Below are positions 1,543 through 50,868 of a stretch of 64,000 nucleotides of DNA, in pieces. The stretch is taken from positions 124,001 through 188,000 of IMG/VR virus record IMGVR_UViG_3300013233_000093; one strand, 5' to 3'. The notes below the pieces were generated by a model. That model did not search any database. It had not been told where the DNA came from and saw nothing but the letters and a program-made list of their open reading frames with translations. Position 1 is the stretch's first letter; the number at the start of each line of letters is the position of its first letter. Both the position numbers and the translations under genes were made by a program.

Positions 1543-3003
1543 ATGATAAACAGAACTGCGAAATACACCTATGGTGAGATGGACGGTACTGACTATAAGA
1601 GAGAGTTGAGAAACACCACAGACCATGCACTGCGCGTTGTAGATGCAAGTGGGCGTACTCAGATACTATCTCCTATAGCCAGGACTCAGTTCGGTAAAAG
1701 TGACGGTTACTTTACCGTGAAGGAAAAACTGTTAGGCAGGGATGCCGGTTCTTATTTAGACATCCCTAAGTTAGACCCGCCTACTGGCGCGGAAACGTGG
1801 ATTGAGATCAAAACGGCGGTGGACGCCTGTACGGTCCTGCAGTCCACTAATGGCATGTATATCGAAGAAGTGGGTTTACATGTATCCACGGTAGACAGTC
1901 GTTCTAGAACCACACATCCGCGCTTTAGTGCGAATCCGTTTAAACAACTAAAGGACAAGCGCGGTGCAGGACTCTCGTTAGAGCTGCTGGATCCGAACTG
2001 TCAGTACGCCACCTACTACGCTAATGTGGGCGGTGTGGTATTTACAGTGATTCCACAGCGTTCACCGGTACCTTCTGAAGATTGCTTACGGCTTACGCGA
2101 TGGGACGGGCGCTCAGGCGACGCAGTCACCACCAAGACAGACGTCATGAAGGCGTTAACCGGTGAGGGCGAGCATGGGATACGGTTATACCAAACCAGTA
2201 TAGACGCCAAGGCGGATGTTAGAAATCCATTGGTCACGGGCAAGGTAAGCGAGTTAGAAACATCCATTGCTAAATCTCGCACCGATAACGAGAAGTTACG
2301 AGAGCTTATTGCTAAGAACAAAGCCAATGCAGAACAGCTTCGCGTAGAAGCAGCCGAGCGAATGGTGAAGTACGAGCAACGCGCTGGACGAGAAAAGGCA
2401 GAAGCGATCGCGGCACGTGAAACAGAGGCACGTAAACACGAAGCACTGATTGCCACAATGCAACACAAGGCATCGTTAGCCGAGTCACGCAGTGTGGAGG
2501 CGGCACGTGTGGCGTCAGAACGCGCTAAGCAGGACGAGGTCAAACGAGTCGAAGCCGTAGCTGCATTAGCAGAGGCGAAACGTGTGGCGGCCGACAAGGC
2601 CAGGCAGGATGAAGTAAAGAGAGCCGAAGCCGTAGCTGCGTTAGCAGAAGCCAAGGCAGAACATCAACGTCGCCATGAGGCGGCCATCAAGAAAGCAGAG
2701 GTGGATTATGAAGCACGATTGGCAAGAGTGACCGCTGAACAAAAACGTGAGGCGAAAGAGGCGCGTGAGAAGTTCGAGAAAGAGCGTGCAGAGATAATTG
2801 CAGCGGAAGTTGCAGAGCAGGTAAACGCAGTAAAAGACAGAGCCCGACGTGAGTTGGAAGCAGAACGCGCGAAACGCCATCGCGCCGAAGAGACCCTTAA
2901 AACCACAGCCCACGCGGTCAAGAAAGAACAGTGGGCCGTGGTTAAGGTTGCCTTAGGCGTGGTAGCAGCAGCATTCGCACTATGGAAAACGTTTGCCACG
3001 TAA
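1543..3003 (+). CDS. Coiled-coil protein with C-terminal hydrophobic anchor
   Basis: 486 aa; long A/E/K/R-rich coiled coil with a duplicated QDEVKRxEAVAALAEAK; hydrophobic C-terminus; lies between MCP and nvRNAP genes. Confidence 0.8.
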   Translation: MINRTAKYTYGEMDGTDYKRELRNTTDHALRVVDASGRTQILSPIARTQFGKSDGYFTVKEKLLGRDAGSYLDIPKLDPPTGAETWIEIKTAVDACTVLQSTNGMYIEEVGLHVSTVDSRSRTTHPRFSANPFKQLKDKRGAGLSLELLDPNCQYATYYANVGGVVFTVIPQRSPVPSEDCLRLTRWDGRSGDAVTTKTDVMKALTGEGEHGIRLYQTSIDAKADVRNPLVTGKVSELETSIAKSRTDNEKLRELIAKNKANAEQLRVEAAERMVKYEQRAGREKAEAIAARETEARKHEALIATMQHKASLAESRSVEAARVASERAKQDEVKRVEAVAALAEAKRVAADKARQDEVKRAEAVAALAEAKAEHQRRHEAAIKKAEVDYEARLARVTAEQKREAKEAREKFEKERAEIIAAEVAEQVNAVKDRARRELEAERAKRHRAEETLKTTAHAVKKEQWAVVKVALGVVAAAFALWKTFAT

Positions 3004-10754: not shown

Positions 10755-13169
10755 ATGGCTAAACGTAAAAAATCACCTAAGACTAAGGTGTCGAAGGCTG
10801 AGCTTAAAAACGCACTAAAGGTTTCGGCCAGCTTAATCGTCCCGCGTAAGAAAACCGCACCACGTAAAGGAAACGCAGGTGCATTGACGAGCGTCATTAC
10901 CAATGCACTGAACACCACAGGTAAGGGCGTCAGTGAGAACAAGTTAATGATGCGCTTGTTGCCAGACCTAGAGGTTGTAGCCAACATCACCGTGGGGTCT
11001 GTACTGGCGCCCAAGGATCTACTGGATCCCAGCTTACACTTCACGTTAGATATACCACCGGATAGAAAGGCACCTTCCCCAGAGGTATTGTCGTATGTAT
11101 CGAATCACTTCACAAACGAATCGGGTTACAACCTCCTGTCGAAGCTTCGTACGATCTTAAGAGACGCGTTGTTTGAGGAGGGCGCACATGCTTCCATTAT
11201 CTTGCCAGCTAAGACACTAGAAGATTTCTCTGCCATGGCCAGAGCTGAACTGGCAAAGGTACACGTAACGGAGAAGGGCGGTAAACTCGGTGCCCTGTCG
11301 TATGGCATGCAGTCACTGCAATTAGCAGCAACCTCCGCTGTAAATGAAATGATGCAGTACGGACTTGTGTCTGGAGATACAAAATACGGCTTCGATGTAT
11401 GTGACAATCCTGCAGTACTGCGAGCACCTGAAACTGTGACCAGTTCTGTAAGCGATATGTACGCCACTGCAGTAGGGACACAGTCCATCACTAAAGCAGG
11501 TGGATACACTTCAGTGACAGCGGGTAAAACTCCAGACGGCGAGCCGCTCGTGCTGCGCGTGCCTATGGACAGCATAGCGCCTGTTTACAGCAACGGCGAT
11601 ACGATTGGTTACTACCTGTTGTTAGACGATCAAGGCCGTCCTGTTTCAAAGATACAACACGGGGCAGCGGGGGAACGTGTTCAGCGCGAGTTAAATAGAA
11701 TGTCTAAGGAGAACATCCTTGGAGGCATACTGTCCGCCGTTGGCATTCGCCAGAGTACAGACACAAACAAACCCAATGCAGCCGTGATGTTAAACGAGTA
11801 TGAAAATGTACTTGACGCAGAATTGGCAGCGCAACTTAACAAGTCAGGTGTATTCGGTAAAGACGTGACGGTAAGTCATCCCACGGGTTTTGCCCGTACT
11901 ATGTTTTATCGCGCACTGCGCAGCACTAAAACGAGAATGCTATTTGTCCCGACGTCTCTGGTGGCCTACTATGCACACAGACGCAACGAGTTTGGTTTAG
12001 GCGAAAGCTTGCTGGAGTCCACCAAGGCGTACGGCGTCATGCGGGTAACATTGTTGCTTGCTCACGTCATGAGTGGCGTGAAGGCGTCCGTGGGCAGAAC
12101 CATACTTGACGTGACGTTAGACGAAGATGACAACGATCCTGAAGCTACTGTGTCGGCGTCAGTGGCCAACTATGCGTCATATCAAACAGATCTGGTGTCC
12201 TTTAACATGCAGCAGTTTGATGGCTTGGCTGCATCGCTTAACCGTGCATCATTAGATGTGAATGTAGACGGCGGAGATATCTTCCCCGGCACAAAAACCG
12301 AACTACGGGATGCATCAAGATCGCCCATTGATCCAGATACGGATACACTAGACGAGTTGAAGATGATGCAGTACATGGGCATAGGCGGCCTTTTACCCGA
12401 GTTGGTATCCAGTGTGATATCTGGAGACACCGCCACTGCAGTGACGACTCGCTCAGAACTCTTTGCAAAGACAATCATCGACATTGGCGATGGGTTTAGT
12501 GAGTACCTTACAGAGTTTGTGAGGAACTACATCAAGAACAGCGAACTGCTCACCAAAAAGATCAAAGAAGGTTTGGGTAAAGACATGGACGCAAGCGAAT
12601 GGATCGACTCGCTTAGAGTCAAGATCCCTCGACCTGACCTAGTTAAGATTAAGGCGCAGGGCGAGGCATTAAATGAGTTTAAGTCCTATGTGGAAGACGC
12701 CATCGAGGCCTTTGTCAGTGAAGACATGGTAGATTCGTTGTTCGACGGTGACGTCGACTCACGCATGATGGCCACCATACAAGAAGGCGCTAAGGGCGTG
12801 ATCATCCGTAACTGGATGGCTAAGCAAAACATGTTACCTGAAATGGTTAACGCCTTTAGTACGGACGGCGATGTGATGGGCGACGCGATCGTAGATCACA
12901 ACAACCTTCTTCTAGATGTACTCAAGCCGGTACTGCTCACCATGCTTAAGAAGGAAGTGAAACTTGCTAAGCGTATGGAGAAGGCTAAAGAAGATCCTGC
13001 TGAGGAAGAAGCAGCCGCAGAGGCGGAGGCTAATGATCCTGCCGCTGGCGGCGATGACGCTGGCGGCGAGACACCGCCCACTGACGACGCAGGCGGTGAC
13101 GCATCCGTTGAACCAGGCGCAGCCGACGACGGTGCCCCGGGCGGAGCTGATCCATTCGACATGGGGTAA
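10755..13169 (+). CDS. Portal protein (phiKZ gp129-like)
   Basis: 804 aa; LLPDLE....I.VGSVL.PKDL, GYYLLLDDQGRP, YYA...NEFG.G.SLL motifs; acidic Gly-rich tail; gene order. Confidence 0.7.
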   Translation: MAKRKKSPKTKVSKAELKNALKVSASLIVPRKKTAPRKGNAGALTSVITNALNTTGKGVSENKLMMRLLPDLEVVANITVGSVLAPKDLLDPSLHFTLDIPPDRKAPSPEVLSYVSNHFTNESGYNLLSKLRTILRDALFEEGAHASIILPAKTLEDFSAMARAELAKVHVTEKGGKLGALSYGMQSLQLAATSAVNEMMQYGLVSGDTKYGFDVCDNPAVLRAPETVTSSVSDMYATAVGTQSITKAGGYTSVTAGKTPDGEPLVLRVPMDSIAPVYSNGDTIGYYLLLDDQGRPVSKIQHGAAGERVQRELNRMSKENILGGILSAVGIRQSTDTNKPNAAVMLNEYENVLDAELAAQLNKSGVFGKDVTVSHPTGFARTMFYRALRSTKTRMLFVPTSLVAYYAHRRNEFGLGESLLESTKAYGVMRVTLLLAHVMSGVKASVGRTILDVTLDEDDNDPEATVSASVANYASYQTDLVSFNMQQFDGLAASLNRASLDVNVDGGDIFPGTKTELRDASRSPIDPDTDTLDELKMMQYMGIGGLLPELVSSVISGDTATAVTTRSELFAKTIIDIGDGFSEYLTEFVRNYIKNSELLTKKIKEGLGKDMDASEWIDSLRVKIPRPDLVKIKAQGEALNEFKSYVEDAIEAFVSEDMVDSLFDGDVDSRMMATIQEGAKGVIIRNWMAKQNMLPEMVNAFSTDGDVMGDAIVDHNNLLLDVLKPVLLTMLKKEVKLAKRMEKAKEDPAEEEAAAEAEANDPAAGGDDAGGETPPTDDAGGDASVEPGAADDGAPGGADPFDMG

Positions 13170-13175: not shown

Positions 13176-13706
13176 ATGACACCATTAGTAAACTTTGATA
13201 AGGTGTGTTACGTCATACCTGTAGTCGGTACTGCCACCGTGTACATAAAACACCCGGAGTGTGATGGGACGTTATCATTGCTTGTCGATGACCCGACCAT
13301 TGTAACGCCAGCTCTGTATATGGGGTTTACCGTAGACACGACACATTTGTTTGTGTTATCAGAAACCTCTGAAGGATGGACTGTGCAAGTGTATACCCAC
13401 GACACGGATGAATGGTCGTTTAAGCGTGCAGTGGCGCTGCCGACAGGCGACGCCCCTTTAGTAGAGTACCTTTATGCAATGAATCGGCTATTCGTGTGCG
13501 TTACGTACACCGATGTTATGACCGCGTACGATGTCTCTGTGGCTGGTACACAGCCAGCGACTGTGGATCGACGGGTTACTTCTGTGTGCGAATCCATTAG
13601 GTACGCCACAGATAACGAGGAGTGGCAGCGGAAAGAGATGGAGCTGCAAGCCTCCGCTAAGGAGATCCTTGTGGCGAAGTCTAAAGCGCAAGCAAAGGAG
13701 TCCTAG
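13176..13706 (+). CDS. Beta-rich hypothetical protein (partial propeller-like)
   Basis: 176 aa; repeated strands such as WTVQVYTHDTDEWSF. Confidence 0.7.
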   Translation: MTPLVNFDKVCYVIPVVGTATVYIKHPECDGTLSLLVDDPTIVTPALYMGFTVDTTHLFVLSETSEGWTVQVYTHDTDEWSFKRAVALPTGDAPLVEYLYAMNRLFVCVTYTDVMTAYDVSVAGTQPATVDRRVTSVCESIRYATDNEEWQRKEMELQASAKEILVAKSKAQAKES

Positions 13707-13730
13707 TTCAGTAATGGACAGGATATCACT

Positions 13731-14456
13731 ATGACTAAATCATACCAAACGGTCAACTCGGCATCTTGTGATAACACTATACAGGTAATGTCGGATCGTG
13801 GTGTGGATGGTGTAGTGGACGTGGTGCGGGTTGTAAAGCGCAGTGGCAAGTGTCTGGCGGAGATAGGTAAGGCTATGCCTCCTGTCACGTTAAGAGGCTT
13901 AATGGTGCCTGGTATTGAAGGGATTGTGCACACGCTGTTTGGCATGCATCAGACCCTCTCTCCTAACGGCGAGTGGTTATGTGTGTCAAGCGATGTAATG
14001 ATTGACGGGATTGATTCCGGCATGACGTTGCATATGTACACAGTAAGATCGGATGGCGTAGTCTATGTCGGAAGTTTTCAGCCATTGGCTAATGACTTTG
14101 AAGAAGTAGACGACGGCTATGTCTCTATCTGTCTTTCAGACGACGGTAATATTGTTTCGGTGAGTAATACAATAGACCACACCTATTCGGATGTGGAACT
14201 GTATTGCATTTACGAGAGGGATCGCGTTGGGACTGAATGGTCATTTGTTGAGGCTATTCCCAGCGTATCCATCACGGAAGCCGGATTAGGCTACGACGCG
14301 TACGCAGATGTAGTGTCTCGTACAGCTATAACCCGCTACACATACATTTGCGAGTTCAGCGAATGTAAGTTCTTTAAACAATGGTTACTGTACACTTGTG
14401 GTGCAGCAGCCCTTACAGTGCTCATTGTAATCCCGGTTATAATGTTCATACTCTAA
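13731..14456 (+). CDS. Partial beta-propeller protein with C-terminal TM anchor
   Basis: LSPNGEWLCVS and LSDDGNIVSVS blade motifs; C-terminal hydrophobic helix. Confidence 0.75.
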   Translation: MTKSYQTVNSASCDNTIQVMSDRGVDGVVDVVRVVKRSGKCLAEIGKAMPPVTLRGLMVPGIEGIVHTLFGMHQTLSPNGEWLCVSSDVMIDGIDSGMTLHMYTVRSDGVVYVGSFQPLANDFEEVDDGYVSICLSDDGNIVSVSNTIDHTYSDVELYCIYERDRVGTEWSFVEAIPSVSITEAGLGYDAYADVVSRTAITRYTYICEFSECKFFKQWLLYTCGAAALTVLIVIPVIMFIL

Positions 14457-14459
14457 GGC

Positions 14460-14657
14460 GTGGATATGAAGCGGAGAGATAAGGTGTTTGTTATGTTCAT
14501 TGGCGTTACATTTAGCGTCATCGTGATGCTTACTACGGTGTTGGTCAATGTTAACATACGCAATGCAGCTAATGTGGAGTTGGAACGATCCGCAGCACGC
14601 GAGGCATGTTTAAATGTCTTACGTGATGTGGGTAATACTACTGGGTCAGCGAATTGA
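14460..14657 (+). CDS. Small single-TM protein
   Basis: 65 aa; VFVMFIGVTFSVIVMLTTVLV. Confidence 0.65.
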   Translation: MDMKRRDKVFVMFIGVTFSVIVMLTTVLVNVNIRNAANVELERSAAREACLNVLRDVGNTTGSAN

Positions 14658-14678
14658 CCTGCTCTTTAGGAGCAAGAT

Positions 14679-15266
14679 ATGCACAACCATATGTCAGAAA
14701 CATCCACCAGAACCTGCGTTTACGGCGGAGACGTCAGAGCGCAATCTGATCCATCACGAGCCAGTGGCTCTGGTAAAGTGGAGATTTCGAGGCGTGGTGA
14801 TAACGGTGCGTGGAAGCCAGTAGCGGAGCTAAGGAGTAACGTCTCCAATGATGCGTTTTTCGGTACCTCCATCGGCATAACCCGAGACGGTAAATTTCTG
14901 GTTGTGGCCTCCACTGTGGTGAATCGTCACTCAGCTATGAAGGGCATAGTCAGTATTTTTGAAAACGCTAAGGCAAATGCATGGGTGCAGGTCGGCGGGA
15001 TCTCTATAGATCTCAGTCCGTATAAGCAAAGCACCACGGCATTCGATGACGCGTTGTTTCTTTCCGATGATAGAAGGCTTATCTCAATTGGAGGAGACAC
15101 GGGGGATCGTATACGCACACCTTTAATTTACGAGTACAGTTACACACAACGAAGCTGGGTACGGCGTTCAGGTGAGGCACCTGCCGAACCGTTAAGACGC
15201 AAGCTTACGTCATGGCATATTCTACTGGGGTGTGTTCTCGTTGTACCGTTGCTGTATTACGTTTAG
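14679..15266 (+). CDS. FG-GAP-like partial propeller with C-terminal TM anchor
   Basis: GSGKVEI, FFGTSIGITRDGKFLVVA, LSDDRRLISIG; C-terminal WHILLGCVLVVPLLYYV; AGGAG RBS. Confidence 0.8.
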   Translation: MHNHMSETSTRTCVYGGDVRAQSDPSRASGSGKVEISRRGDNGAWKPVAELRSNVSNDAFFGTSIGITRDGKFLVVASTVVNRHSAMKGIVSIFENAKANAWVQVGGISIDLSPYKQSTTAFDDALFLSDDRRLISIGGDTGDRIRTPLIYEYSYTQRSWVRRSGEAPAEPLRRKLTSWHILLGCVLVVPLLYYV

Positions 15267-15274
15267 GAGGTACT

Positions 15275-15808
15275 GTGTACGATTTCTATTCGCGCGTTAT
15301 TTTAGCCGCACAACGCGGCAAGCCTGATCCAAACGTCACTATAGTGTTTACCTCTGACGGGGCGCACGCTGCAATGGGGTTATATGGGTATAAAGGTGGG
15401 GAAGGGGCACTGCATTTGTTTAAGAGTGCGGACAGTGACTGGATACGGTGTTCTACGGTTACCGGCGGAGATACGTCCCTTACTTTAGCTAAACACCTAG
15501 CAATGTCTCCCAACGGCAGGTATCTGGCATGTACGTTATCGGACGTCAGTACAGGCAGTTGGCATGCGGTACGGTTGTTTCGCGTTACCCCCACGCACAA
15601 GCTCGTGTTGTGTGGCGAGACGTCGTTGACAGCAAACGATGAATGTGCGCTGTCTGTGACAGATGACGGCGAGTACGTCAACGTCTGTCATATAGGGACG
15701 TCGGAGTCGGTGTGCATGTGCACGCCACGGCAAAGTACTGGATACGGGACATTACCGTATTTGTTTGCTGGCGCGTTGGTGTCAGCAGCGGCTTTGTTGT
15801 TTATTTAA
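15275..15808 (+). CDS. FG-GAP-like partial propeller with C-terminal TM anchor
   Basis: Start moved to GTG 15275 after AGGAGG; FTSDGAHAAMG, MSPNGRYLAC, VTDDGEYV; C-terminal TM. Confidence 0.75.
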   Translation: MYDFYSRVILAAQRGKPDPNVTIVFTSDGAHAAMGLYGYKGGEGALHLFKSADSDWIRCSTVTGGDTSLTLAKHLAMSPNGRYLACTLSDVSTGSWHAVRLFRVTPTHKLVLCGETSLTANDECALSVTDDGEYVNVCHIGTSESVCMCTPRQSTGYGTLPYLFAGALVSAAALLFI

Positions 15809-15826
15809 CATGCACGGTTTACGCTT

Positions 15827-16339
15827 ATGAACAATTTAGTAGACGATAATCGGAGGATATTTAAACATTCACCGGACCGGCCTTTGTCGGTGTCGAACAA
15901 TGGGAGATACGTAATCACTTCAGATCCTTACAATCTCCGTTTCGGAAACGTGATGATCTATCGTGACGTGGACAATTCGTATGAAGTTGTGGGTGAGATT
16001 CCCAATCCCAAGTCCGTAAGTGGTGTAGGAGTGGCGTTAGCGATATCGGATAGTGGTGTGTGGGCAGTCGTGGGCGTGCAGTTAGAAGGTTGTCTTCACT
16101 GTGATAGGTACACGTATTTGAATAAGCAGTGGGTGGCGAGTACACCTATTGTGATAACAAATGCAAGTGGTTGCAGAACCACAGTACAGGTCACAGATGA
16201 CGGCGGCTTGATATGTTACTCCAGAGACCCTCTTGGGTTTCCGGCGAGTAAGCGCGTACTTACGCCGATTTTTATAGGCGGTGCAGTGACGGCGACATTG
16301 TTGTTGACCTGTTCCATCTTAGTCGGATACTTTCTTTAG
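15827..16339 (+). CDS. FG-GAP-like partial propeller with C-terminal TM anchor
   Basis: VSNNGRYVI, GVALAISDSGVWAVVG, VTDDGGLI; C-terminal TM. Confidence 0.75.
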   Translation: MNNLVDDNRRIFKHSPDRPLSVSNNGRYVITSDPYNLRFGNVMIYRDVDNSYEVVGEIPNPKSVSGVGVALAISDSGVWAVVGVQLEGCLHCDRYTYLNKQWVASTPIVITNASGCRTTVQVTDDGGLICYSRDPLGFPASKRVLTPIFIGGAVTATLLLTCSILVGYFL

Positions 16340-16354
16340 ACAGGAGTATGCATT

Positions 16355-16570
16355 ATGCAAAAACGTTCCAAGTTGGGCGTTGTACTACATAAAGCTTTTC
16401 GTGATAACTTAAAGAAATCCCTGGCAGGTGCCAGCGTAGCGGTCATCGCGTTGGCCTGGTGTTTAAACGCCGGGTACGAATGGCAGTGTGTCCGTGACCC
16501 ATCCTTTGCAGGCTGTCAGTACATTACTGTCGCGCCATTGGTGGAAGTCGACGCCATACCAAGGGGTTAA
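16355..16570 (+). CDS. Small membrane protein
   Basis: 71 aa; AGGAG RBS; central hydrophobic segment. Confidence 0.65.
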   Translation: MQKRSKLGVVLHKAFRDNLKKSLAGASVAVIALAWCLNAGYEWQCVRDPSFAGCQYITVAPLVEVDAIPRG

Positions 16571-16601: not shown

Positions 16602-16641
16602 ATAGTAGCCGGGTAATCCGGCTACTATCCTTTTATGCCGT
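16602..16641 (+). terminator. Hairpin + TATGCCGT
   Basis: atagtagccgg-gtaat-ccggctactat, TATGCCGT at 16634-16641. Confidence 0.8.
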
Positions 16642-16681: not shown

Positions 16682-17569
16682 ATGAACATCAGTTGCGCAC
16701 TTAACGGCATTTTAGGCCACGTGGGAGTAGACGAGTCAGGCATGCATGCCGTGGTGTCCGTCGAGGGTAAGATAGCTACATATCGCTTAGGCGACCCCGA
16801 CACAGTAGTGGACGGAGCACAGCTCACTTGTGACGGCGAGTACTTCATCGTGGCAATTACAGCTAACGCACAAACCGACCTGTTGACCTTACGTGTCCAT
16901 AAGCAACCAGGGGCGATCGATCTTACATTACAACACCGGCAGGAAATATCGTGCGTGTCTATAGACATGCGCCAGACCAGCGGGTCAGTGGCAGTAAACA
17001 TTACGCAGCGGAACTATTTGTCCAACAGCTTTAGTAAGTCCACTTATGTTATTTACTCAGGTGATTTGATTGCGGTTACTGTGGGACTGGATTACGTATT
17101 TGATTACGATAAAAACGGTTATGTACTGGGCATGTGCGATGGTGTATTAACGCGGACACATACAGACAGTAATGGCTTCACAAACATCAACTCACTGATC
17201 CCTGACATTATTGAAGGTTACAACATAGCAGGGTTACGCATCAATGACAACGATTTGGTCAGTATTGCGCTAAGCTCACCATGTCCTGGAGGTGTTTGGC
17301 ATTCCATTCTAATCGTTAACTACGTTACAGGCGAGGTGTACGACGATTCCTACATCCCATCTGTCCATTCTGAAGACACACTGGCCATACCTGCCTCTTC
17401 GCCCAATACGTTTATCTACACAAACGACTATCACGTGAAGGAAGGCAGAATGGATACCTTTATAGGGTTGAACTCGTGGGCGTATATTAACCTGGAGAAG
17501 ATAGGCGTCATTAGGGAAAACACCGGACTGGCTGCGTTGGAAGCAAAGAAACGAGTAGTGATGCAATAA
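16682..17569 (+). CDS. Beta-rich hypothetical protein
   Basis: 295-aa ORF filling the space between a terminator and a promoter. Confidence 0.75.
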   Translation: MNISCALNGILGHVGVDESGMHAVVSVEGKIATYRLGDPDTVVDGAQLTCDGEYFIVAITANAQTDLLTLRVHKQPGAIDLTLQHRQEISCVSIDMRQTSGSVAVNITQRNYLSNSFSKSTYVIYSGDLIAVTVGLDYVFDYDKNGYVLGMCDGVLTRTHTDSNGFTNINSLIPDIIEGYNIAGLRINDNDLVSIALSSPCPGGVWHSILIVNYVTGEVYDDSYIPSVHSEDTLAIPASSPNTFIYTNDYHVKEGRMDTFIGLNSWAYINLEKIGVIRENTGLAALEAKKRVVMQ

Positions 17570-17570
17570 A

Positions 17571-17629
17571 CCTCACCGTTTATTCAAAACTATATCACTA
17601 TTATGATGGACAACGTGTTGTTGTCTTTA
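17571..17629 (+). promoter_or_regulatory. Early promoter cassette copy 3
   Basis: cctcaccgtt TATTCAAAACTATATCACTATTATGA tggacaacgtgttgttgtcttta. Confidence 0.9.
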
Positions 17630-17662
17630 CAGCCCTGGCATTTAACAAGAGTATTATAGGTT

Positions 17663-18235
17663 ATGAGCAAGCGATCCGCCCAAGTAAGGGTGCAGGATGC
17701 ATTAGCGATATTAAACCCTGGCGGGTCTTTGCATGCATCCGTATTTTCAGAAGACGGCAGTACATTCGTTACTGCTCGTAACGTTCGTGGCAATAAGAAG
17801 CGTGTTGTACGCATCTTCTACAACGAGGGCAGGGGGTTTGTAGAAGCGCCTATGTTAATGATGTCCAATACGCGTGATAAAAACGTGGTCTTGGGCGAGC
17901 GCGTTGGCGTGTCCGCTAAGGGCGATGTAATCGCGGTAGGTGGAATCTTAACAGACGGCACGGCTAAGTATCACATTTACGTATACGAGAAGCAGCTTAA
18001 GGGTCCGGAGTGGATACTTACTTCTGACGTAGAAATAGTAGGATCGTTTCGAACTCAGCTGCAACTCACGAGCATAACAGTGGCATCATCCACCAGCATT
18101 TTCGCTGATCGTAAACACACCACGGGCAATCTTGTCACGCGGTTTAACATTACCAAAGATGAAGAAGGTGTATGGGACGTAACAAGCCTAGCGCATACTT
18201 CTTTAACAACAGGAGTAAACTATGAAGCACAGTGA
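17663..18235 (+). CDS. Partial beta-propeller (FG-GAP-like) early protein
   Basis: FSEDGSTFV and LGERVGVSAKGDVIAVGG motifs. Confidence 0.75.
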   Translation: MSKRSAQVRVQDALAILNPGGSLHASVFSEDGSTFVTARNVRGNKKRVVRIFYNEGRGFVEAPMLMMSNTRDKNVVLGERVGVSAKGDVIAVGGILTDGTAKYHIYVYEKQLKGPEWILTSDVEIVGSFRTQLQLTSITVASSTSIFADRKHTTGNLVTRFNITKDEEGVWDVTSLAHTSLTTGVNYEAQ

Positions 18236-19082
18236 ATTACTTGAGTATGCACGTAAGGTATTCGACGGGGAAGTAAACGCAGGTACGAGTGAAGATTCTA
18301 ATGCCGTGTATGTAGCTGTATCTAAACGCCATCGCTTTGGTGTAAACTTCTATCTCTATCAAGACGGTGTATTTACACACGTCTGTGATTACGATAAAGG
18401 TTTTGTGGATCTTGATATCCATAACAACATCGCGTACATCGTAACGGGTACCCGGTCTACCATGGATGGCGATGGTGGCACAACAATCATTCGCTTTGAC
18501 GTGTCCACAGGTAAGGAATTAGGGACGATCGTCGCACCCCTACCCATTACACTAACTGCCATCGAAGTCTCCGGTAGCGGGCTCTATGCCTTCGTAGGCG
18601 TGGTTATGAAGGATGGTGAAACCGAAAGTCACATCTACACCTATGACATATCGGAACAAGACGGTGATTTGTCAGAACGTATCGCTGTGGTAAAGGGCAA
18701 GGTTGTAGAGATCCGGTATACGTATGGACTGCTGTTATACAGCGCAGTAGTAAACGACTCATTAGAAGTCTACGTATGTTACAACCAGCCGGACACGGCC
18801 ATGTGGGTCAATCTAAGAACACCCGCTATTCTTGGTCGCGAACATAACACCGCTAGACATCCGCTGTCTGGAGGAATGGTTATGCCACTCAAGTCAGAAG
18901 GTTACTGCGTAATCGCCACTGTAGGGGACACTGCATTAGTCTGGGTGGATCCTATCCAGGAAGCAACCAGCGTCATGATCGTTGGGCCAGGTACCGTAAC
19001 GGTACCAAACGTACTCATTGCGGGTAACCGCTTTGACGGTAAAGTCATCCTCGTAAACGGAGTACTGCATCATGACCGATAA
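18222..19082 (+). CDS. Beta-propeller-like protein
   Basis: 286 aa; AGGAG RBS; IIRFDVSTGKEL and IEVSGSGLYAFVG motifs. Confidence 0.75.
   Translation: MKHSELLEYARKVFDGEVNAGTSEDSNAVYVAVSKRHRFGVNFYLYQDGVFTHVCDYDKGFVDLDIHNNIAYIVTGTRSTMDGDGGTTIIRFDVSTGKELGTIVAPLPITLTAIEVSGSGLYAFVGVVMKDGETESHIYTYDISEQDGDLSERIAVVKGKVVEIRYTYGLLLYSAVVNDSLEVYVCYNQPDTAMWVNLRTPAILGREHNTARHPLSGGMVMPLKSEGYCVIATVGDTALVWVDPIQEATSVMIVGPGTVTVPNVLIAGNRFDGKVILVNGVLHHDR
18863..18909 (+). repeat. 47-nt segment duplicated at 19325-19371
   Basis: gctgtctggaggaatggttatgccactcaagtcagaagg(t/c)tactgcg, one mismatch between copies. Confidence 0.95.
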
Positions 19083-19449
19083 GAAAGATGAACAAGCGTT
19101 TAACCAGCCTACCGCCGACGAGCTCGCGTTATATAGTACGAGCGCGTTACTTGAACAGACACTAACATCGCGTTGTGCTGTAAAGGACGAGGACTATGTG
19201 AATAATTGGTTACGTGAAAACGATTCCGCAGCTCGTGACCATTTACAACGTACGCAGGCGTACAACCTTAATGGCATTTCAGGTAGTACCGGGCCTGGGC
19301 GCGGAATGACCCAACCAAGTATCGGCTGTCTGGAGGAATGGTTATGCCACTCAAGTCAGAAGGCTACTGCGCGGGGAATGACCCCTGGGGTCGTACAATG
19401 CGACGAGACGGCTTACGTATCGCGTTTACCGGAGGGTGATGATGACTAA
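19072..19449 (+). CDS. Hypothetical protein carrying a captured 47-nt insert
   Basis: 125 aa; GGAG RBS; overlaps both neighbours. Confidence 0.6.
   Translation: MTDKKDEQAFNQPTADELALYSTSALLEQTLTSRCAVKDEDYVNNWLRENDSAARDHLQRTQAYNLNGISGSTGPGRGMTQPSIGCLEEWLCHSSQKATARGMTPGVVQCDETAYVSRLPEGDDD
19325..19371 (+). repeat. Second copy of the 47-nt segment
   Basis: Flanked by gcgcggaatgaccc (19299-19312) and gcgcggggaatgaccc (19369-19384). Confidence 0.95.
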
Positions 19450-19735
19450 CCCACTTAAGAAGTTTTTAGATGAGCAGATACAGGGTAAACGTATGAAGTC
19501 TCTTCGTAAGGGTATTGTACACGACGCAACGAAGAAGGCGGCTGAAGACGAGATGTTACCACCAGCGGCCTTTTTGAGTTTGCACGGAGGACCATCAGAC
19601 CATCCCAATGATGTCGCGTCACAACGCAGTACTCCAAATAACCACGACACCACGCCCACCACACACGATGACAGTGATTCCTCCGACTCAGACTCGGGAG
19701 GGTGTGTTCGTGACAGCGGCGGAGGAGGGGATTAA
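19436..19735 (+). CDS. Small protein with Ser/Asp/Gly-rich tail
   Basis: GGAGG RBS; tail DSDSSDSDSGGCVRDSGGGGD. Confidence 0.65.
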   Translation: MMMTNPLKKFLDEQIQGKRMKSLRKGIVHDATKKAAEDEMLPPAAFLSLHGGPSDHPNDVASQRSTPNNHDTTPTTHDDSDSSDSDSGGCVRDSGGGGD

Positions 19736-19830
19736 AAGAACGTTGTGGCATGACCGGCTTGATTGGACATACCACAGGTACACCAAACCGGGATTATACA
19801 ATCCCGATACTAAACCGGAGGTAAATATAA

Positions 19831-20496
19831 ATGTTGAAAAGATTAAGATCCAGACTGTGGGCGATTTATCACGGTTCAGAAGAAGTACCTGAGAAGAAGT
19901 CACCTTGGGAATCGCTTGCACCTAACACCAATGTTACTGAATGGGTGTCTAACGGCGGAGACCCGCTTATACCGGGACAGGGTGTGGCTAACTTAGACCA
20001 TCGTGTTATGGTGTCAGAACAGTTTAAAGACGACGATGCGGGTAATCAGATACCAGGAGATATCGGCGTTAGCGTGTTCTTTAGAAGTAAGGCAAAGACA
20101 CCCACAACGTATAAAACGGTTCCGATGTGCATGGCGTTAAAGGACGACTCGTTGATTACGGTTTCTGAGGATCATGTCGCAACACGGTATAACTTACACT
20201 GTGGATGTGTGGAGCATCATAGACTGGGCTTTACGGGCGACGACGTTGTTCGTTACTTCTGGGTTAGCGAGTTATCCGCGGTAGTGGTGGTCGGCACAGG
20301 CGCATCCCGGACAAGGGCATACGGCATCACGATGAACGGCGTGGCCACGATCGCCATTGCAGATCATTACGGGGCGGTATCCGTACACAGTCCAGGTGAC
20401 GGCACAGTACTCGTAAAGATAGGAGACCTGTCTTATCCATTGGACGTCACAAAGTACCATACGAAGCATTACGCTAAAGGAACCGGTTACGCGTAA
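19831..20496 (+). CDS. Hypothetical protein
   Basis: 221 aa; GGAGG RBS; amphipathic N-terminus. Confidence 0.75.
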   Translation: MLKRLRSRLWAIYHGSEEVPEKKSPWESLAPNTNVTEWVSNGGDPLIPGQGVANLDHRVMVSEQFKDDDAGNQIPGDIGVSVFFRSKAKTPTTYKTVPMCMALKDDSLITVSEDHVATRYNLHCGCVEHHRLGFTGDDVVRYFWVSELSAVVVVGTGASRTRAYGITMNGVATIAIADHYGAVSVHSPGDGTVLVKIGDLSYPLDVTKYHTKHYAKGTGYA

Positions 20497-20532
20497 TTCA
20501 TGTAACAAACAACCAACCAGAAGGTATAAACC

Positions 20533-21792
20533 ATGAAGAACAAAAACACACTTACACCCATTGCCACGCATGCATACAAAGACGATTCGCTTGTAATCAG
20601 TCTTCAGTATCCAGACACAGGCATTGAGACAGTCCGTGGTACAATCGATGTACCAGCTATGCTAGAAGGTATGGAGGGCACCCCTGATATACAAGTGACC
20701 ACCCACGGCACCTTTGTGCTTTTGATCGTGGAGAACAAAGTCAAGGTATTCGACGCCATGTCCGCACAGGACGTGTTCAGTGCTGAACTGACCAAACCAG
20801 TAAGTGGATCGGTCATCATGTCCACTGCGTTGTATCTCTTGACTGAGACGGACAGTTGCAAATGGCTGATGGCAGTTGACTTAGGTACCGGCAAGTTTAA
20901 TAATTACACAGTGTCTCCTAAGGCATACGATGAGATTTTAAACAAGTGGATGAAGACCACTCCAGACGGCAAGGCACGACTGCTTTCTCGGTATCCTTCA
21001 GCACCCACTACTATGGACTACAACAGCGTACACGTACGACTACCAAATGAAACACAGGCGTCTAACTCATTTGGGGAAATCGAGATCACCCCGACTGGCT
21101 TTGAGTACAAAATGCCCAATAGCGAAGACTGGCAGGTCGTAGCGGTGGATGAGTTGTCGTATGTGGATCGCACTAAGACATGTATTTTCTACACCACTAC
21201 TGCAGGTGCTGTGTATTGCATTGATCTAGACGCGACTGAGTTGTCACGCCTTACTGACTTACAGGTCGATTTAAAGCACGGTCTTGCAGGCATTGCTTCG
21301 ACCGCAGGCAGTGACGACGTCTTAATGGTGACCAGCAGCAGCGGTCGTTATCTACGTGTCTACGCGAAGGGCGTAGTAGCGGAGGACTATCCAGTAACCT
21401 ATCCGATTGTAAATGCCGCAGTTATTAACTCGACCACAGCACTCGTTGCTTTGGACAAATCCCGCCCAGGGCAAGAGACATTGCCAAGACTATACCTTTG
21501 CGATCTCGCCACTGGCACAGTGCTTACTAAATCGTCAAGTCCTGTGCGTGTGTTAAACGAGTCTATGGATTACATTGTGAGCGCTGCTCTAGGTGGTGTG
21601 GACGGTAAGACACTGGTCGTAGTCAACACAGAAGGCGAATACATGACACTACTGGAAAAGAAAGCCGCTTCCAGCAGCGAGTATGTCGCAAAGGGCACCA
21701 CCATGCATGCATGGTACCAATGCGATTCAGAAGGCATTCCCACAGAAGATGAGTCTGGGGACACAGAGGGCGACGCAGTAAGCGTCGTATAA
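20533..21792 (+). CDS. Beta-propeller-like protein
   Basis: 419 aa; recurring LMAVDLGTGK / VYCIDLDATE / LYLCDLATGT blade motifs. Confidence 0.75.
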   Translation: MKNKNTLTPIATHAYKDDSLVISLQYPDTGIETVRGTIDVPAMLEGMEGTPDIQVTTHGTFVLLIVENKVKVFDAMSAQDVFSAELTKPVSGSVIMSTALYLLTETDSCKWLMAVDLGTGKFNNYTVSPKAYDEILNKWMKTTPDGKARLLSRYPSAPTTMDYNSVHVRLPNETQASNSFGEIEITPTGFEYKMPNSEDWQVVAVDELSYVDRTKTCIFYTTTAGAVYCIDLDATELSRLTDLQVDLKHGLAGIASTAGSDDVLMVTSSSGRYLRVYAKGVVAEDYPVTYPIVNAAVINSTTALVALDKSRPGQETLPRLYLCDLATGTVLTKSSSPVRVLNESMDYIVSAALGGVDGKTLVVVNTEGEYMTLLEKKAASSSEYVAKGTTMHAWYQCDSEGIPTEDESGDTEGDAVSVV

Positions 21793-22025: not shown

Positions 22026-22214
22026 GTGGGTAGTATGAAATGTGGACTAATGATTTACACGCACAGCGGACTGTGGTCTAGGCCTGTAATGCGGATGTGT
22101 AACGCGTGTAAACAGTTTAACACGTGTACGATAACAGCACTCGAAGTGCGTAACTACAGAAGGAATCGGTTACATGAAGAATCAAACAATCGCGTCTCTG
22201 GAAAACATGCTTAA
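22026..22214 (+). CDS. Possible small protein (CxxC)
   Basis: 62-aa ORF filling the gap before the ligase; AAGGT RBS. Confidence 0.35.
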   Translation: MGSMKCGLMIYTHSGLWSRPVMRMCNACKQFNTCTITALEVRNYRRNRLHEESNNRVSGKHA

Positions 22215-24153
22215 GCAGTTAACGCGCGAGTACACAGAGAACGGCAAGACAGATTTATCCGACGCGGCATTCGACGTGTTGCGTTCTAAGCTGGTGGCAT
22301 TGTACGACGGCAAGGTACCTGCTAAATCCGTGCTAAACGCAGTAGGTGCACCGCCTGCGTTGGGTGTGACTAAAACAGTCACTCGTAAGATTCCCATGGA
22401 GTCGTTAGCGAATGCGTTCTCAGACGAAGACATTCAAACGTTTTGTGATAAGGTACAGCAAGCGTACATAGAAGTACACGGCAAGAACGCTCGTCCAAAG
22501 TACCTTGTGGAGCCTAAGTGGGACGGACTGGCTTGTGAGTTAACATACGAGCCTGGGAAAGAAGTGCGTGCGTCTACACGAGGAGACGGCACGATAGGTG
22601 AGGATATCTCTATCACAGTCGGTAAAATGACTGATTCGATACCCCGTACAATCAAGTTCGATAAGACTTTGACTATTCGAGGCGAGATTGTCATGACCCG
22701 TGCTGACATGGATAAATGGAACAACGACCAGACTTGGGCGCGTAATAAACCATTGGTGTCTCCAAGGTCTGCGGCATCCGGGTCTGTCAAAAAGATGAAC
22801 GATCCGATGTCTAACGAGATAAGACCCTTGAAGTTCATGCCATACGCTTATGTTATCGATGGGTTAGTGCATACCACAGACGTATCCATCACGGATGCGT
22901 TTCCAGCCACTAAAGCACTTACTGCCTTCGGTGGCCACGAGTCCGTAGTGACTGCGTGTCTTACAACACTGTCGTACGCCGGTACTACCGACGATGTGCC
23001 CGATACTGACGGTGTAGTGATAAAGGTAAAGTGTCCTAAGGTACGAGCCTACATGGGGTCTACGTCGCATCACCCCAGATGGGCGATTGCACGTAAATGG
23101 GCACCTGCTAAATCCATTACTCCGTTATTAAGCGTTAGATGGAGCGTAGGTCAGTCTGGCGATATTACACCGGTGGCAGTCCTAGCACCTGTGCAGGTAG
23201 GTGACGTGATGGTGTCGTCCGCACAGTTGTTTAACATGGCACACATCAAGGCGCTTGACTTGATGATCGGCCAAGACGTATACATCCACAGAGCCGGAGA
23301 AGTCGTGCCTGAATTAATCGGCCCTGTCCCTGACACGATTCATAACGATTGTCGTGAGATCAAAGCTCCGATTCGCTGTCCCAGCTGTGGCAGTAAGGTG
23401 GTGGTGGAACCTAAGTCTAGCGTGGTCTCGTGTCCGTATACAGAAGGTTGTCCAGAACAGGTCATTGGTAGATTGTATCGTGCGTTCGGCAAGCATGGCT
23501 TGGATGTAAAAGGCCTCGGAGTCAAAACCTTGCAGCGCTTCTATTTAGAATGTGAGGTTATGCATCCAATAGACTTGCTGGAGTTAGATACGGATGAGTT
23601 GATAAAGGGGTTTGGATCGGCATTGGAGGCGACTAAGTACGTCACCTACTTGATCGCACATGAAGTGCCGTACAACAAGTTTATCTTCGCGTTAGCTATT
23701 CCAGGCGTGGGCAAAAGTTTGTCACTTACTTTGGCAAAACGGTTTAAGACCATCGCCGGTTTATTCACAGCCACTGTAGAAGAGTTAGCGGATCTGCCTG
23801 ACGTAAGTAAGGAATCCGCCGTGAGAATATCGGAGTTTCTACAGGACGAAGATAATTGCGTAACTGCAAATGCAATAACAGACCACGTTCGACTTTCGTA
23901 TACCACGTATCGGGATAACGCATTTTCTCATAAACGGGTGTGTGTAACAGGGTCGTTCTCAGGAGCGTCTAGATCCGAGGTGACTACTGCACTGGAAAAC
24001 TCCAACGCTAAGGTTATGTCTTCTTTAAGCAAACGTGCCGACTACCTTATCATGGGTTCGTCTGGAGTGGGCAAGAAGAAAACCAAAGCGGCTTTGGATT
24101 ATGGCATAGAACTTATCACAGAAGACGAGGTCTATAAGATTTTAGATCTTTAA
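22174..24153 (+). CDS. ligA: NAD-dependent DNA ligase
   Basis: EPKWDG (KxDG), TRGDG, RGE, DGVVIK, PRWAIARK, OB fold, CPSC..C..C zinc finger, HhH repeats, BRCT domain. Confidence 0.97.
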   Translation: MKNQTIASLENMLKQLTREYTENGKTDLSDAAFDVLRSKLVALYDGKVPAKSVLNAVGAPPALGVTKTVTRKIPMESLANAFSDEDIQTFCDKVQQAYIEVHGKNARPKYLVEPKWDGLACELTYEPGKEVRASTRGDGTIGEDISITVGKMTDSIPRTIKFDKTLTIRGEIVMTRADMDKWNNDQTWARNKPLVSPRSAASGSVKKMNDPMSNEIRPLKFMPYAYVIDGLVHTTDVSITDAFPATKALTAFGGHESVVTACLTTLSYAGTTDDVPDTDGVVIKVKCPKVRAYMGSTSHHPRWAIARKWAPAKSITPLLSVRWSVGQSGDITPVAVLAPVQVGDVMVSSAQLFNMAHIKALDLMIGQDVYIHRAGEVVPELIGPVPDTIHNDCREIKAPIRCPSCGSKVVVEPKSSVVSCPYTEGCPEQVIGRLYRAFGKHGLDVKGLGVKTLQRFYLECEVMHPIDLLELDTDELIKGFGSALEATKYVTYLIAHEVPYNKFIFALAIPGVGKSLSLTLAKRFKTIAGLFTATVEELADLPDVSKESAVRISEFLQDEDNCVTANAITDHVRLSYTTYRDNAFSHKRVCVTGSFSGASRSEVTTALENSNAKVMSSLSKRADYLIMGSSGVGKKKTKAALDYGIELITEDEVYKILDL

Positions 24154-48223: not shown

Positions 48224-48370
48224 ATGTTTAACTGTTTAACTGAGTATCGCGTAGCGTCATCCCGTATTGCATTGGGCTTCTTTGTATTTGGCGTGGCAAG
48301 CGTCGTGTATAAATACCGTTATCCCGTGGCAATCATTGCGGCATACGCCGCGTTATACCAGTTGGTTTAA
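48224..48370 (+). CDS. Small membrane protein (48 aa)
   Basis: AGGAG RBS; two short hydrophobic segments; hairpin at 48382-48406 follows. Confidence 0.6.
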   Translation: MFNCLTEYRVASSRIALGFFVFGVASVVYKYRYPVAIIAAYAALYQLV

Positions 48371-48426
48371 CAACCCCTTTAGCAGTCGGCGTTTTACGCC
48401 GACTGCCTTTATACAGGATTATCAAA

Positions 48427-49510: not shown

Positions 49511-49534
49511 AGAGCTTAAAGAGGATTGTGCACT

Positions 49535-49954: not shown

Positions 49955-50013
49955 AGGTTTGCGGTAACTAAGCAAGTAATGTCACATGCTTATCATTAAT
50001 GAGGAATGGTGTT

Positions 50014-50867: not shown

Positions 50868-50868
50868 A

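What the first reader, a model, noticed from the sequence alone, without database searches (positions are those of the whole stretch)
13176..16570. Array of tail-anchored partial beta-propellers downstream of the portal gene
Seen: four genes (13731, 14679, 15275, 15827) of 170-240 aa each carry only about 2-4 FG-GAP-like blades, no N-terminal signal and a single C-terminal TM helix. They are interleaved with two tiny TM genes, and no obvious terminator separates them from the portal gene before 16602. Inference: the incomplete propellers probably complete a ring by homo- or hetero-oligomerising on the cytoplasmic face of the inner membrane. This could give a combinatorial scaffold, for example for membrane-initiated prohead assembly or for binding host membrane complexes.
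Basis: partly seen in the sequence, partly recalled or inferred. Interest (0 to 1): 0.65.

Follow-up and report, generated by a model that had tools for sequence, protein, structure and literature searches.

The report
Tail-anchored three-blade propeller gene array
Right after the portal gene, an uncultured nucleus-forming-type jumbo phage from a microbial mat encodes four very diverged sister proteins, each an unfinished three-blade piece of a beta-propeller ending in a membrane anchor; this build turned up nowhere else I looked, and what the proteins do is unknown.

Summary
Seven tightly packed + strand genes follow the portal gene (a phiKZ gp129 homologue), and a strong hairpin at 16602-16628 closes the unit. 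Four of them (13731, 14679, 15275 with a GTG start, 15827) have no N-terminal signal and end exactly in a hydrophobic helix preceded by basic residues. All four are remote but significant relatives of FG-GAP_2 repeat proteins. AlphaFold2 models of two show exactly three four-stranded blades, then a tether, then the anchor. Alignments suggest about 2.5-3 blades for the other two.

Pairing into closed rings is only inferred. A solved three-blade fragment that trimerises (PDB 6r5z) matches the model almost end to end, but the one complex prediction gave no answer.

The link to the portal is weakened. The closest relative (portal 32% identical) has one full-size FG-GAP gene of the tail module at this position and no short FG-GAP frames. 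Four other relatives have no such genes near their portals. So the array looks like a lineage-specific accessory family derived from the phage's own FG-GAP propellers.

The membrane-tethered binding-platform reading is likely. The prohead-nucleation reading is a minority possibility. I rate this a new variant of known kinds, of moderate interest.

The parts
10755..13169 (+). Portal protein gene (804 aa), first gene of the co-directional unit
   Evidence: phrog_3004 at E 1e-108. About 27% identical to phiKZ gp129 over 81-85% of its length and phmmer E 8e-60. gp129 is the dodecameric portal of phiKZ (PMC13250141).
13176..13706 (+). 176-aa soluble, beta-rich protein with a charged C-terminal helix; possibly another partial propeller
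   Evidence: No transmembrane segment and no family hit. The ESM Atlas model has low confidence (pLDDT 0.52) but resembles part of 7-blade lactonase/YncE propellers, with TM-score by query of 0.55-0.65. One blade-like match to an FG-GAP protein. This is a lead only.
13731..14456 (+). Tail-anchored mini-propeller 1 (241 aa): three blades at residues 5-177, a tether at 181-216 with remnants of a fourth blade, and a transmembrane segment at 217-241
   Evidence: AlphaFold2 gives 12 strands, pLDDT 72, pTM 0.71. FG-GAP alignment A2. phmmer best E 1e-12 against FG-GAP proteins, while controls give nothing. ESM Atlas neighbours are FG-GAP_2 clusters. BFVD matches are parts of larger viral FG-GAP proteins. 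Transmembrane sum -2.3 kcal/mol.
14460..14657 (+). Tiny membrane protein (65 aa, or 63 aa from the ATG at 14466): basic N-terminus, one transmembrane segment at about residues 9-29, and a tail of about 35 residues
   Evidence: Kyte-Doolittle and Hessa-type scores. Codon-usage frame score is positive. Only a weak hit to phrog_12445 (E 0.0015, function unknown).
14679..15266 (+). Tail-anchored mini-propeller 2 (195 aa): three blades at residues 11-162, a basic tether, and a short C-terminal hydrophobic helix at 176-195
   Evidence: AlphaFold2 gives pLDDT 75.6, pTM 0.73 and 12 strands. 1420 FG-GAP-type relatives at E<=1e-3. Similar to the phage's own 572-aa FG-GAP_2 propeller (E 2e-13). Foldseek and VIA-align match parts of 6-7-blade propellers and the 3-blade fragment 6r5z. 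The transmembrane call is marginal (+1.7 kcal/mol).
15275..15808 (+). Tail-anchored mini-propeller 3 (177 aa, GTG start): one leading strand, two full blades, a partial third blade, and a C-terminal hydrophobic helix at 159-177
   Evidence: AGGAGG lies 4 nt upstream of the GTG. phmmer best E 8e-14, with 69 hits below 0.01 against FG-GAP proteins. Blade count comes from alignment A4; the protein was not modelled. The transmembrane call is marginal (+1.3 kcal/mol).
15827..16339 (+). Tail-anchored mini-propeller 4 (170 aa): two full blades, the first half of a third, and a transmembrane segment at about 148-170
   Evidence: phmmer best E 1e-12, with 38 hits below 0.01. An own-genome blade HMM hits residues 59-88. 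Alignment A3; the protein was not modelled. Transmembrane sum -1.0 kcal/mol.
16355..16570 (+). Tiny protein (71 aa): basic N-terminus, a weak transmembrane segment at residues 22-40, and a C-terminal part containing cysteines
   Evidence: A contig from an RNA library covers 16339-16489. No family was found.
16602..16628 (+). Terminator-like hairpin that closes the unit
   Evidence: 12-bp stem with a 3-nt loop. -23 kcal/mol, z -4.6 against shuffles. Only four U follow it. A 111-nt gap separates 16570 from the next gene.
17663..18235 (+). Related soluble member outside the finding: a 190-aa FG-GAP-like protein (about 3-4 blades) with no anchor
   Evidence: Own-genome blade HMM hit at E 2e-08. 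phmmer best E 2e-12, with 97 hits below 0.01 against FG-GAP proteins. No transmembrane segment.

Best explanation
The four genes form a lineage-specific tandem family of tail-anchored inner-membrane proteins. Each holds a three-blade (or nearly three-blade) FG-GAP-type propeller arc in the cytoplasm, on a tether of about 15-40 residues.

They most likely arose from the phage's own full-size FG-GAP propeller genes of the tail module, by partial duplication plus gain of a C-terminal anchor. They are probably transcribed with the portal gene as one late unit, together with two tiny membrane proteins.

A three-blade arc has two open edges. I therefore infer that the arcs pair, most likely as homo-oligomers (dimers giving six blades, or trimers giving nine), and perhaps with other arcs of the family, including the soluble ones at 13176 and 17663. 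This would give membrane-bound ring-shaped binding platforms.

The client is unknown. Because the family is absent from every relative examined, I take it to be an accessory function rather than a core assembly step. Candidates are tethering a phage structural intermediate at the membrane, or binding a host envelope or defence component.

Shown: the gene structure, the FG-GAP homology, three blades in two members, and the hydrophobic C-terminal ends. Inferred: membrane insertion and topology, oligomerisation, co-transcription, expression timing and function.
For: Architecture. Homology to FG-GAP repeat proteins, with shuffled and reversed controls. The same genome holds three 7x FG-GAP_2 propellers (Pfam E 5e-30 to 2e-56), and 14679 matches one of them at E 2e-13.

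Three-blade models. They match only parts of 6-7-blade propellers (TM-score by query 0.5-0.58, by target 0.15-0.36) and parts of larger viral FG-GAP proteins.

Precedent for closure: 6r5z, three 3-blade fragments forming a 9-blade ring, matches at Z 12.9 over 117 of 119 residues. Engineered 3-blade fragments form stable dimers or trimers (PMC6805158). Partial blades at the ends of 15275, 15827 and 13731 would allow strand exchange between chains; this is inference.

Topology: basic residues lie before each anchor, nothing lies after it, and there is no signal peptide.

Operon-like packing and the closing hairpin. Codon usage. Four 100%-identical contigs in a metatranscriptome library fall in the portal 3' end, 13731, 14679 and 16355.

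Derived and accessory nature: the closest relative has one 343-aa FG-GAP-like gene without an anchor between its portal and the baseplate-assembly gene, and only FG-GAP frames of 348 aa or more on its contig. Nothing similar lies near the portals of phiKZ, 201phi2-1, Goslar or FLC9.
Against: No experiment or conservation supports membrane insertion. Two of the four C-terminal helices are short and only marginally hydrophobic, and AlphaFold2 gave them low confidence, because the alignments do not cover them.

Oligomerisation is unsupported by computation here: the complex job gave no answer.

No orthologue exists, so purifying selection cannot be tested. Two members were not modelled.

The RNA-library contigs could be carried-over DNA, and they show neither strand nor operon structure. 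The relative G001 is only 74% complete by CheckV, so absence there is not proof.
Confidence: 0.5

Rival explanations
1. Prohead nucleation. The anchored rings recruit the portal (or scaffold) to the cytoplasmic face of the inner membrane and start capsid assembly there. This would be a functional analogue of the membrane-bound initiation known for T4 (gp20 with gp40; from my own knowledge).
For: The genes directly follow the portal gene and appear co-transcribed with it. The phage is chimallivirus-like: it has a PhuZ-like gene, non-virion and virion RNA-polymerase subunits and a weak syntenic chimallin candidate. Chimallivirus capsids are assembled on the inner membrane (PMC12908238). In the two reviews I searched by keyword I found no mention of a tether.
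Against: A core assembly factor should be conserved. Yet the closest relative and four other phiKZ-like phages lack anything similar near the portal. The position is explained by descent from a tail-module FG-GAP gene. Four diverged paralogues are not needed for one tether. No portal interaction was tested.
Confidence: 0.12
2. Virion components. The proteins are small baseplate or fibre subunits. On this view the hydrophobic C-terminal helices are not membrane anchors in the producing cell; they bundle together inside the particle, or insert into the host membrane at infection.
For: In phiKZ, the genes after the portal include four paralogous fibre proteins (gp131, 133, 134, 135) that join through a six-helix bundle, and gp131 ends in a 7-blade propeller (PMC13250141). 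In the closest relative, the FG-GAP gene at this position lies next to a baseplate-assembly gene.
Against: There is no similarity to gp130-135 and no attachment domain, since the blades start at residues 5-11. The terminal helices carry no charged residues and are as hydrophobic as true transmembrane segments in two members. Two tiny membrane proteins are interleaved with them.
Confidence: 0.15
3. Envelope-directed function with a different logic: for example lysis timing, superinfection exclusion, or blocking of a host envelope or defence complex. Here the propeller arcs bind host proteins, and ring closure is not essential.
For: Lineage-specific, tandemly duplicated, fast-diverging membrane proteins are typical of host-interaction genes (inference). 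Two tiny single-pass membrane proteins are interleaved. The array is absent in relatives.
Against: No holin, spanin, endolysin or defence-related family was detected in the array, although PADLOC was not run. 16355 has no lipobox. This rival overlaps with the best explanation and differs only in the client and in the need for rings.
Confidence: 0.15
4. Decaying fragments. The ORFs are remnants of one or more broken full-length FG-GAP genes and make no functional product.
For: Each carries fewer blades than any closed FG-GAP propeller. No orthologues exist. Many short FG-GAP ORFs in databases are gene fragments on short contigs.
Against: Each has its own start, three of them with a Shine-Dalgarno-like motif. 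Each has whole blades and the same terminal anchor with a preceding basic patch. Codon usage in frame is normal. Anchor-coding segments would have no place inside a continuous propeller gene. Contigs from an RNA library cover three of the genes.
Confidence: 0.06

Closest known systems
FG-GAP_2 (PF14312) seven-blade propellers, including this phage's own 559-577-aa proteins (window 61386-63119 on the - strand, and two just beyond the window) and integrin alpha headpieces
   Same: The blade sequence motif and the four-stranded blade fold are shared. 14679 matches the phage's own 572-aa member at E 2e-13. Integrin alpha propellers are among the best structural matches.
   Different: These proteins have three blades instead of a closed ring of seven. 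They lack the N-terminal Ig-like domain and have no signal peptide. They carry a C-terminal membrane anchor. The Pfam model itself does not reach them.
Oligomeric propellers built from 3-blade fragments (PDB 6r5z; Afanasieva et al. 2019, PMC6805158)
   Same: Three contiguous four-stranded blades per chain. The model superposes on 117 of 119 residues at Z 12.9 and rmsd 2.3. Such fragments need oligomerisation to close (dimers or trimers).
   Different: Those are engineered WD40 fragments with identical blades, soluble and not natural genes. Here the blades are diverged FG-GAP type, natural and membrane-tethered, and the oligomeric state is unknown.
Open propellers completed in trans (Seh1-Nup85, Sec13-Sec31/Nup145C)
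   Same: These are top Foldseek matches (3f3f, 2pm9, 4xmm). They show the principle that an incomplete ring is closed by a partner chain.
   Different: Those have six blades plus one donated blade, are eukaryotic coat or nuclear-pore proteins, have no membrane anchor and share no detectable sequence relationship.
phiKZ fibre paralogues gp131, gp133, gp134, gp135 (genes just after the portal; gp131 has a C-terminal 7-blade propeller)
   Same: A set of paralogues downstream of the portal gene in a phiKZ-like genome, with a propeller fold in the family (PMC13250141).
   Different: There is no sequence similarity. The gp131-like N-terminal domain is missing, the proteins are far smaller, and the hydrophobic helix is C-terminal. 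phiKZ has no tail-anchored ORF within 12 kb of its portal.
Bacterial tail-anchored membrane proteins (general class; own knowledge)
   Same: A single hydrophobic helix at the extreme C-terminus, no signal peptide, and the bulk of the protein predicted to be cytoplasmic.
   Different: The class is defined by topology, not descent. No known member, to my knowledge, carries a partial propeller, and insertion was not tested here.

Membership tests
FG-GAP_2 repeat family (PF14312) | The sequence matches the Pfam profile above its gathering score | tested here: not met
   The Pfam scan of all four small proteins at E<=1 lists no PF14312 hit. The three large proteins of the same genome hit it at 5e-30 to 2e-56.
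FG-GAP_2 repeat family (PF14312) | Significant sequence similarity to proteins that carry the repeat, above chance controls | tested here: met
   14679 finds 1420 proteins at E<=1e-3 in 1.8 billion. The short relatives found with its profile all carry PF14312. 13731, 15275 and 15827 score best E of 1e-12 to 8e-14 with 27-69 hits, against 0-1 for reversed or shuffled versions.
FG-GAP_2 repeat family (PF14312) | Closed propeller of seven blades in one chain | tested here: not met
   Three blades in the AlphaFold2 models of 13731 and 14679. Two full blades plus a partial third by alignment in the other two.
Tail-anchored membrane proteins | A single hydrophobic helix within a few residues of the C-terminus, with no N-terminal signal or other transmembrane segment | tested here: met
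   The call is clear for 13731 and 15827 and marginal in hydrophobicity for 14679 and 15275.
Tail-anchored membrane proteins | Actual insertion in the membrane with the N-terminal domain in the cytoplasm | not testable with these tools
   Only the charge bias is available: basic residues lie before the helix and nothing follows it.
Oligomeric (multi-chain) beta-propellers | Several chains, each with fewer blades than a ring, assemble into one closed propeller | tested here: inconclusive
   The chains have three blades and resemble the 6r5z fragment. The one complex prediction gave no verdict.
phiKZ gp131-gp135 fibre paralogues | Shared gp131-like N-terminal domain, or any detectable sequence similarity | tested here: not met
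   phmmer of every array protein against phiKZ gp126-gp140 gave a best E of 0.002 in a 15-sequence set, which is not significant.
Holin / spanin lysis proteins (for the two tiny genes) | A match to a known holin or spanin family, or a lipobox for an o-spanin | tested here: not met
   No Pfam or PHROG lysis family was found. 16355 has W at the -1 position before its first Cys, so it has no canonical lipobox (read directly).

The most novel reading that the evidence does not exclude
The four anchored arcs, possibly together with the soluble arcs at 13176 and 17663, assemble combinatorially into closed homo- or hetero-oligomeric propellers on the cytoplasmic face of the inner membrane. These rings would be the missing membrane tether on which this nucleus-forming-type phage starts its procapsids, or docks another virion intermediate. 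That would make them a natural multi-chain propeller system with a role in phage assembly.
Probability: 0.1. Interest if true: 0.8.

Novelty: new variant of a known kind. Interest (0 to 1): 0.5.

Why it matters
Beta-propellers are almost always closed rings within a single chain. Natural proteins that must complete a ring from several chains are rare, and have mostly been studied as engineered fragments (PMC6805158). A tandem family of natural three-blade arcs, each tied to the membrane, would be a ready-made system for studying how propellers assemble and evolve from fragments.

It would also add a new kind of phage membrane protein. If the client proved to be a virion intermediate, it would bear on an open point in nucleus-forming jumbo phages: what holds nascent capsids at the inner membrane.

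More soberly, the array shows how one phage lineage has repeatedly reused its FG-GAP propeller genes. This genome holds at least twelve family members, and its closest relative holds at least nine large ones.

Tried and rejected
1. Complex prediction on 13731 (residues 1-185) with 14679 (residues 1-170): ipSAE 0.00 in both runs, verdict 'no answer'. This is not evidence for or against binding.

2. Word-based protein search with 14679 and with the portal returned only the window's own proteins. The portal search was probably swamped by its low-complexity tail.

3. tblastn of 13731, 14679 and 15827 against 50,697 phage records found no match at E<=0.1. blastn of the whole region found no match.

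4. Pattern scans with the portal alone found nothing in viral contigs or metagenome contigs. A portal alignment was needed to reach relatives.

5. Pfam and PHROGs gave nothing for any array protein.

6. A profile search restricted to proteins of 107-341 aa found 2191 short FG-GAP proteins. Among the best 120, only 3 end in a hydrophobic stretch: one is PEP-CTERM-like and two have N-terminal signals. None has the no-signal-plus-tail-anchor build. Only 120 of the 2191 could be inspected.

7. Homology of the array to phiKZ gp130-135 was considered and rejected.

8. Literature searches for tail-anchored phage proteins and for FG-GAP in jumbo phages returned nothing relevant.

9. The ORF start at 15212 was rejected in favour of the GTG at 15275. 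The ESM Atlas gene call for 13731 starts at residue 20; I disfavour it because the first blade uses residues 5-23 at good confidence.

10. Not run: AlphaFold2 models of 15275 and 15827, further complexes (homo-oligomers, other pairs, portal), and a PADLOC scan.

Full report
**Context.** The window is bases 124001-188000 of a 222,906-bp IMG/VR phage record with direct terminal repeats. The 804-aa gene at 10755-13169 belongs to phrog_3004. It is about 27% identical to phiKZ gp129 over more than 80% of its length, and gp129 is the portal (PMC13250141). The genes upstream on the other strand are homologues of phiKZ gp128 (baseplate wedge), gp139 and gp140. Elsewhere the genome encodes a PhuZ-like protein, homologues of the non-virion and virion RNA-polymerase subunits, and a weak but syntenic chimallin candidate. 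It is therefore a distant chimallivirus-like jumbo phage. Its DNA occurs in a microbial-mat metagenome.

**The observation.** Seven + strand ORFs follow the portal gene with gaps of 3-24 nt, and a strong hairpin follows at 16602-16628 (12-bp stem, -23 kcal/mol, z -4.6).
- The third mini-propeller gene starts at the GTG at 15275, 4 nt after an AGGAGG that overlaps the preceding stop codon.
- All seven ORFs use codons in frame like the long genes of this genome.
- Four products (241, 195, 177 and 170 aa) end in a hydrophobic helix that reaches the last residues. Basic residues precede it and no N-terminal hydrophobic segment is present.
- Two anchors are clearly as hydrophobic as transmembrane segments, and two are marginal.
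- By one simple rule only six genes in the genome look tail-anchored. Four of them falling within six neighbouring genes is unlikely by chance (p about 2e-4).
- The two small interleaved ORFs each have one N-proximal hydrophobic segment.

**What the soluble parts are.** Pfam and PHROGs are silent, but homology is real.
- 14679 matches the phage's own 572-aa and 577-aa proteins. Together with a third protein, these are 7x FG-GAP_2 propellers with an Ig-like N-terminal part.
- An exhaustive search with 14679 found 1420 relatives at E<=1e-3. Every listed hit other than the query's own record is a long multi-repeat protein.
- Against those proteins, 13731, 15275, 15827 and the anchor-less 17663 all score E of about 1e-12 or better with dozens of hits. 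Reversed and shuffled versions score nothing comparable.
- AlphaFold2, using alignments of matched segments, gives three four-stranded blades for 14679 (pLDDT 75.6, pTM 0.73) and three for 13731 (pLDDT 72.0, pTM 0.71). A low-confidence tether and the anchor follow.
- The models align only to parts of 6-7-blade propellers in the PDB and to parts of larger viral FG-GAP proteins. The ESM Atlas gives the same picture for 13731 and, as a weaker lead, for 13176.
- Alignments of 15827 and 15275 to FG-GAP repeats show two full repeat units plus a partial third. In 15275 an extra leading strand is present, and 13731 carries remnants of a fourth blade in its tether. These two proteins were not modelled.

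**Do the arcs close into rings?** This is inference.
- The only near full-length structural match is PDB 6r5z, a three-blade fragment that trimerises into a nine-blade ring (Z 12.9, 117 of 119 residues).
- In that study, three-blade fragments formed dimers or trimers and never hetero-oligomers. Propellers split over several chains are described there as exceptional (PMC6805158).
- Partial blades at chain ends would suit strand exchange between chains. All four anchors contain small-residue patches that could help helix pairing (read directly).
- My single complex job, on 13731 with 14679, returned no answer. It counts neither way.

**Is it tied to the portal?** Comparative data argue against this.
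- Using a portal alignment I found 34 related viral contigs. The closest (L008, portal 32% identical) is syntenic upstream of the portal. Downstream it has a 182-aa ORF, one 343-aa FG-GAP-like ORF without an anchor, and then the homologue of window 56893-57810, a baseplate-assembly protein.
- In the present phage about 43 kb separate the portal from that baseplate gene. Four FG-GAP-like paralogues of 330-383 aa lie directly before it, and the mini-propeller array lies directly after the portal.
- The relative's contig holds at least nine large FG-GAP frames but none below 348 aa.
- No tail-anchored ORF and no FG-GAP blade lies within 10-12 kb of the portal in phiKZ, 201phi2-1, Goslar or FLC9. 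None of the 34 contigs shows a tail-anchored FG-GAP protein.
- The array is thus a lineage-specific derivative of the tail-module FG-GAP family, and its place beside the portal is probably inherited rather than functional.

**Interpretation.** I take the four proteins to be tail-anchored, cytoplasm-facing, three-blade arcs that oligomerise into membrane-bound rings and serve as binding platforms, with an accessory rather than core role.
- Confidence in the architecture is about 0.8.
- Confidence in ring formation is about 0.55.
- Confidence in any particular client is 0.2 or less.
- Rival readings are virion subunits with bundling helices (echoing the four phiKZ fibre paralogues after the portal), host-directed envelope functions, and gene decay. 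They are listed with their tests in the rival explanations.

**Expression.** A small metatranscriptome from the same study contains four contigs, 100% identical, lying in the portal 3' end, 13731, 14679 and 16355. This is compatible with transcription but does not prove it. Contigs carry no strand or level information, and DNA carry-over is possible.

**Novelty.** Both ingredients (FG-GAP blades and tail anchors) are known, and short FG-GAP proteins exist in databases. The combination is what I did not find elsewhere: no signal peptide, three blades, a terminal anchor, four tandem paralogues, all in a phage. It was absent among the 150 best exhaustive hits, the 120 best short relatives, 50,697 phage records and 34 related contigs. 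These searches are samples, not proof of absence.

**Limits.** There are no orthologues, so no test of selection is possible. Two members are unmodelled. The anchors lie outside the alignments used for folding. 

Noticed in passing
window 1543-3003 (+); L008 1069-2085 (+): A 486-aa protein with a C-terminal hydrophobic anchor lies just upstream of the polymerase gene (phrog_2943). It has a 338-aa homologue in the closest relative (E 2.5e-31) that also ends in a hydrophobic stretch. This is a second, conserved tail-anchored family with no PHROG match.
   Followed up: partly
window 52514-56891 (+) and 56893-57810 (+): Four tandem paralogues of 330-383 aa each carry FG-GAP-like blades (about the size of a full seven-blade ring). 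They lie directly upstream of a baseplate-assembly gene (phrog_3216, E 1e-66). They are probably baseplate or fibre propellers, and the closest relative has a single 343-aa counterpart.
   Followed up: partly
window 61386-63119 (-); L002 2130-3809 (-) and 4543-6261 (-): Three proteins of 559-577 aa each combine an Ig-like N-terminal part with seven FG-GAP_2 repeats (four called in the 572-aa one by Pfam). The relative G001 has at least nine such large frames at 27-50 kb, one of them 2185 aa. This is a large expansion of likely receptor-binding propellers in this clade.
   Followed up: partly
L010 21873-22178, L013 21119-22294, L016 16590-17720, L027 21763-22116, L028 16329-17534 (all -): Other chimallivirus-like contigs carry a different conserved tail-anchored protein (376-401 aa where complete) 4-10 kb from the portal. 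It has a shared basic-then-hydrophobic C-terminal motif. No homologue exists in this genome at E<0.01, and none in phiKZ gp126-140.
   Followed up: partly
window 13169 to 56893: Relative to the closest relative, about 43 kb lie between the portal and the baseplate-assembly gene. This stretch includes an NAD-dependent DNA ligase (22174-24153; phrog_3869, E 5e-131) and many ORFs of unknown function. It points to a large insertion or rearrangement splitting the head-tail junction.
   Followed up: no
window 48267-51630 (+): A run of six or seven small proteins with one to four predicted transmembrane segments each forms a second membrane-protein cluster. Its function is unknown.
   Followed up: no
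window 16682-21792 (+): After the hairpin come further beta-rich ORFs of 125-419 aa. 17663 is clearly FG-GAP-like and soluble. 18222 shows weak similarity to 15827 (E 0.008). The others (16682, 19831, 20533) gave no significant match.
   Followed up: partly
window 12780-13046: One metatranscriptome contig joins 12780-12812 (+) to 12913-13046 (-), an opposite-strand joint inside the portal gene. It rests on a single contig at depth 2, so it is probably an assembly or library artefact.
   Followed up: no
genome 71497-73398 (+), outside the window: The chimallin candidate matches phiKZ gp54 only at E 2e-4, but it has the right size (633 aa) and sits next to the gp55 homologue. Whether this phage builds a nucleus is therefore likely but not established.
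   Followed up: no
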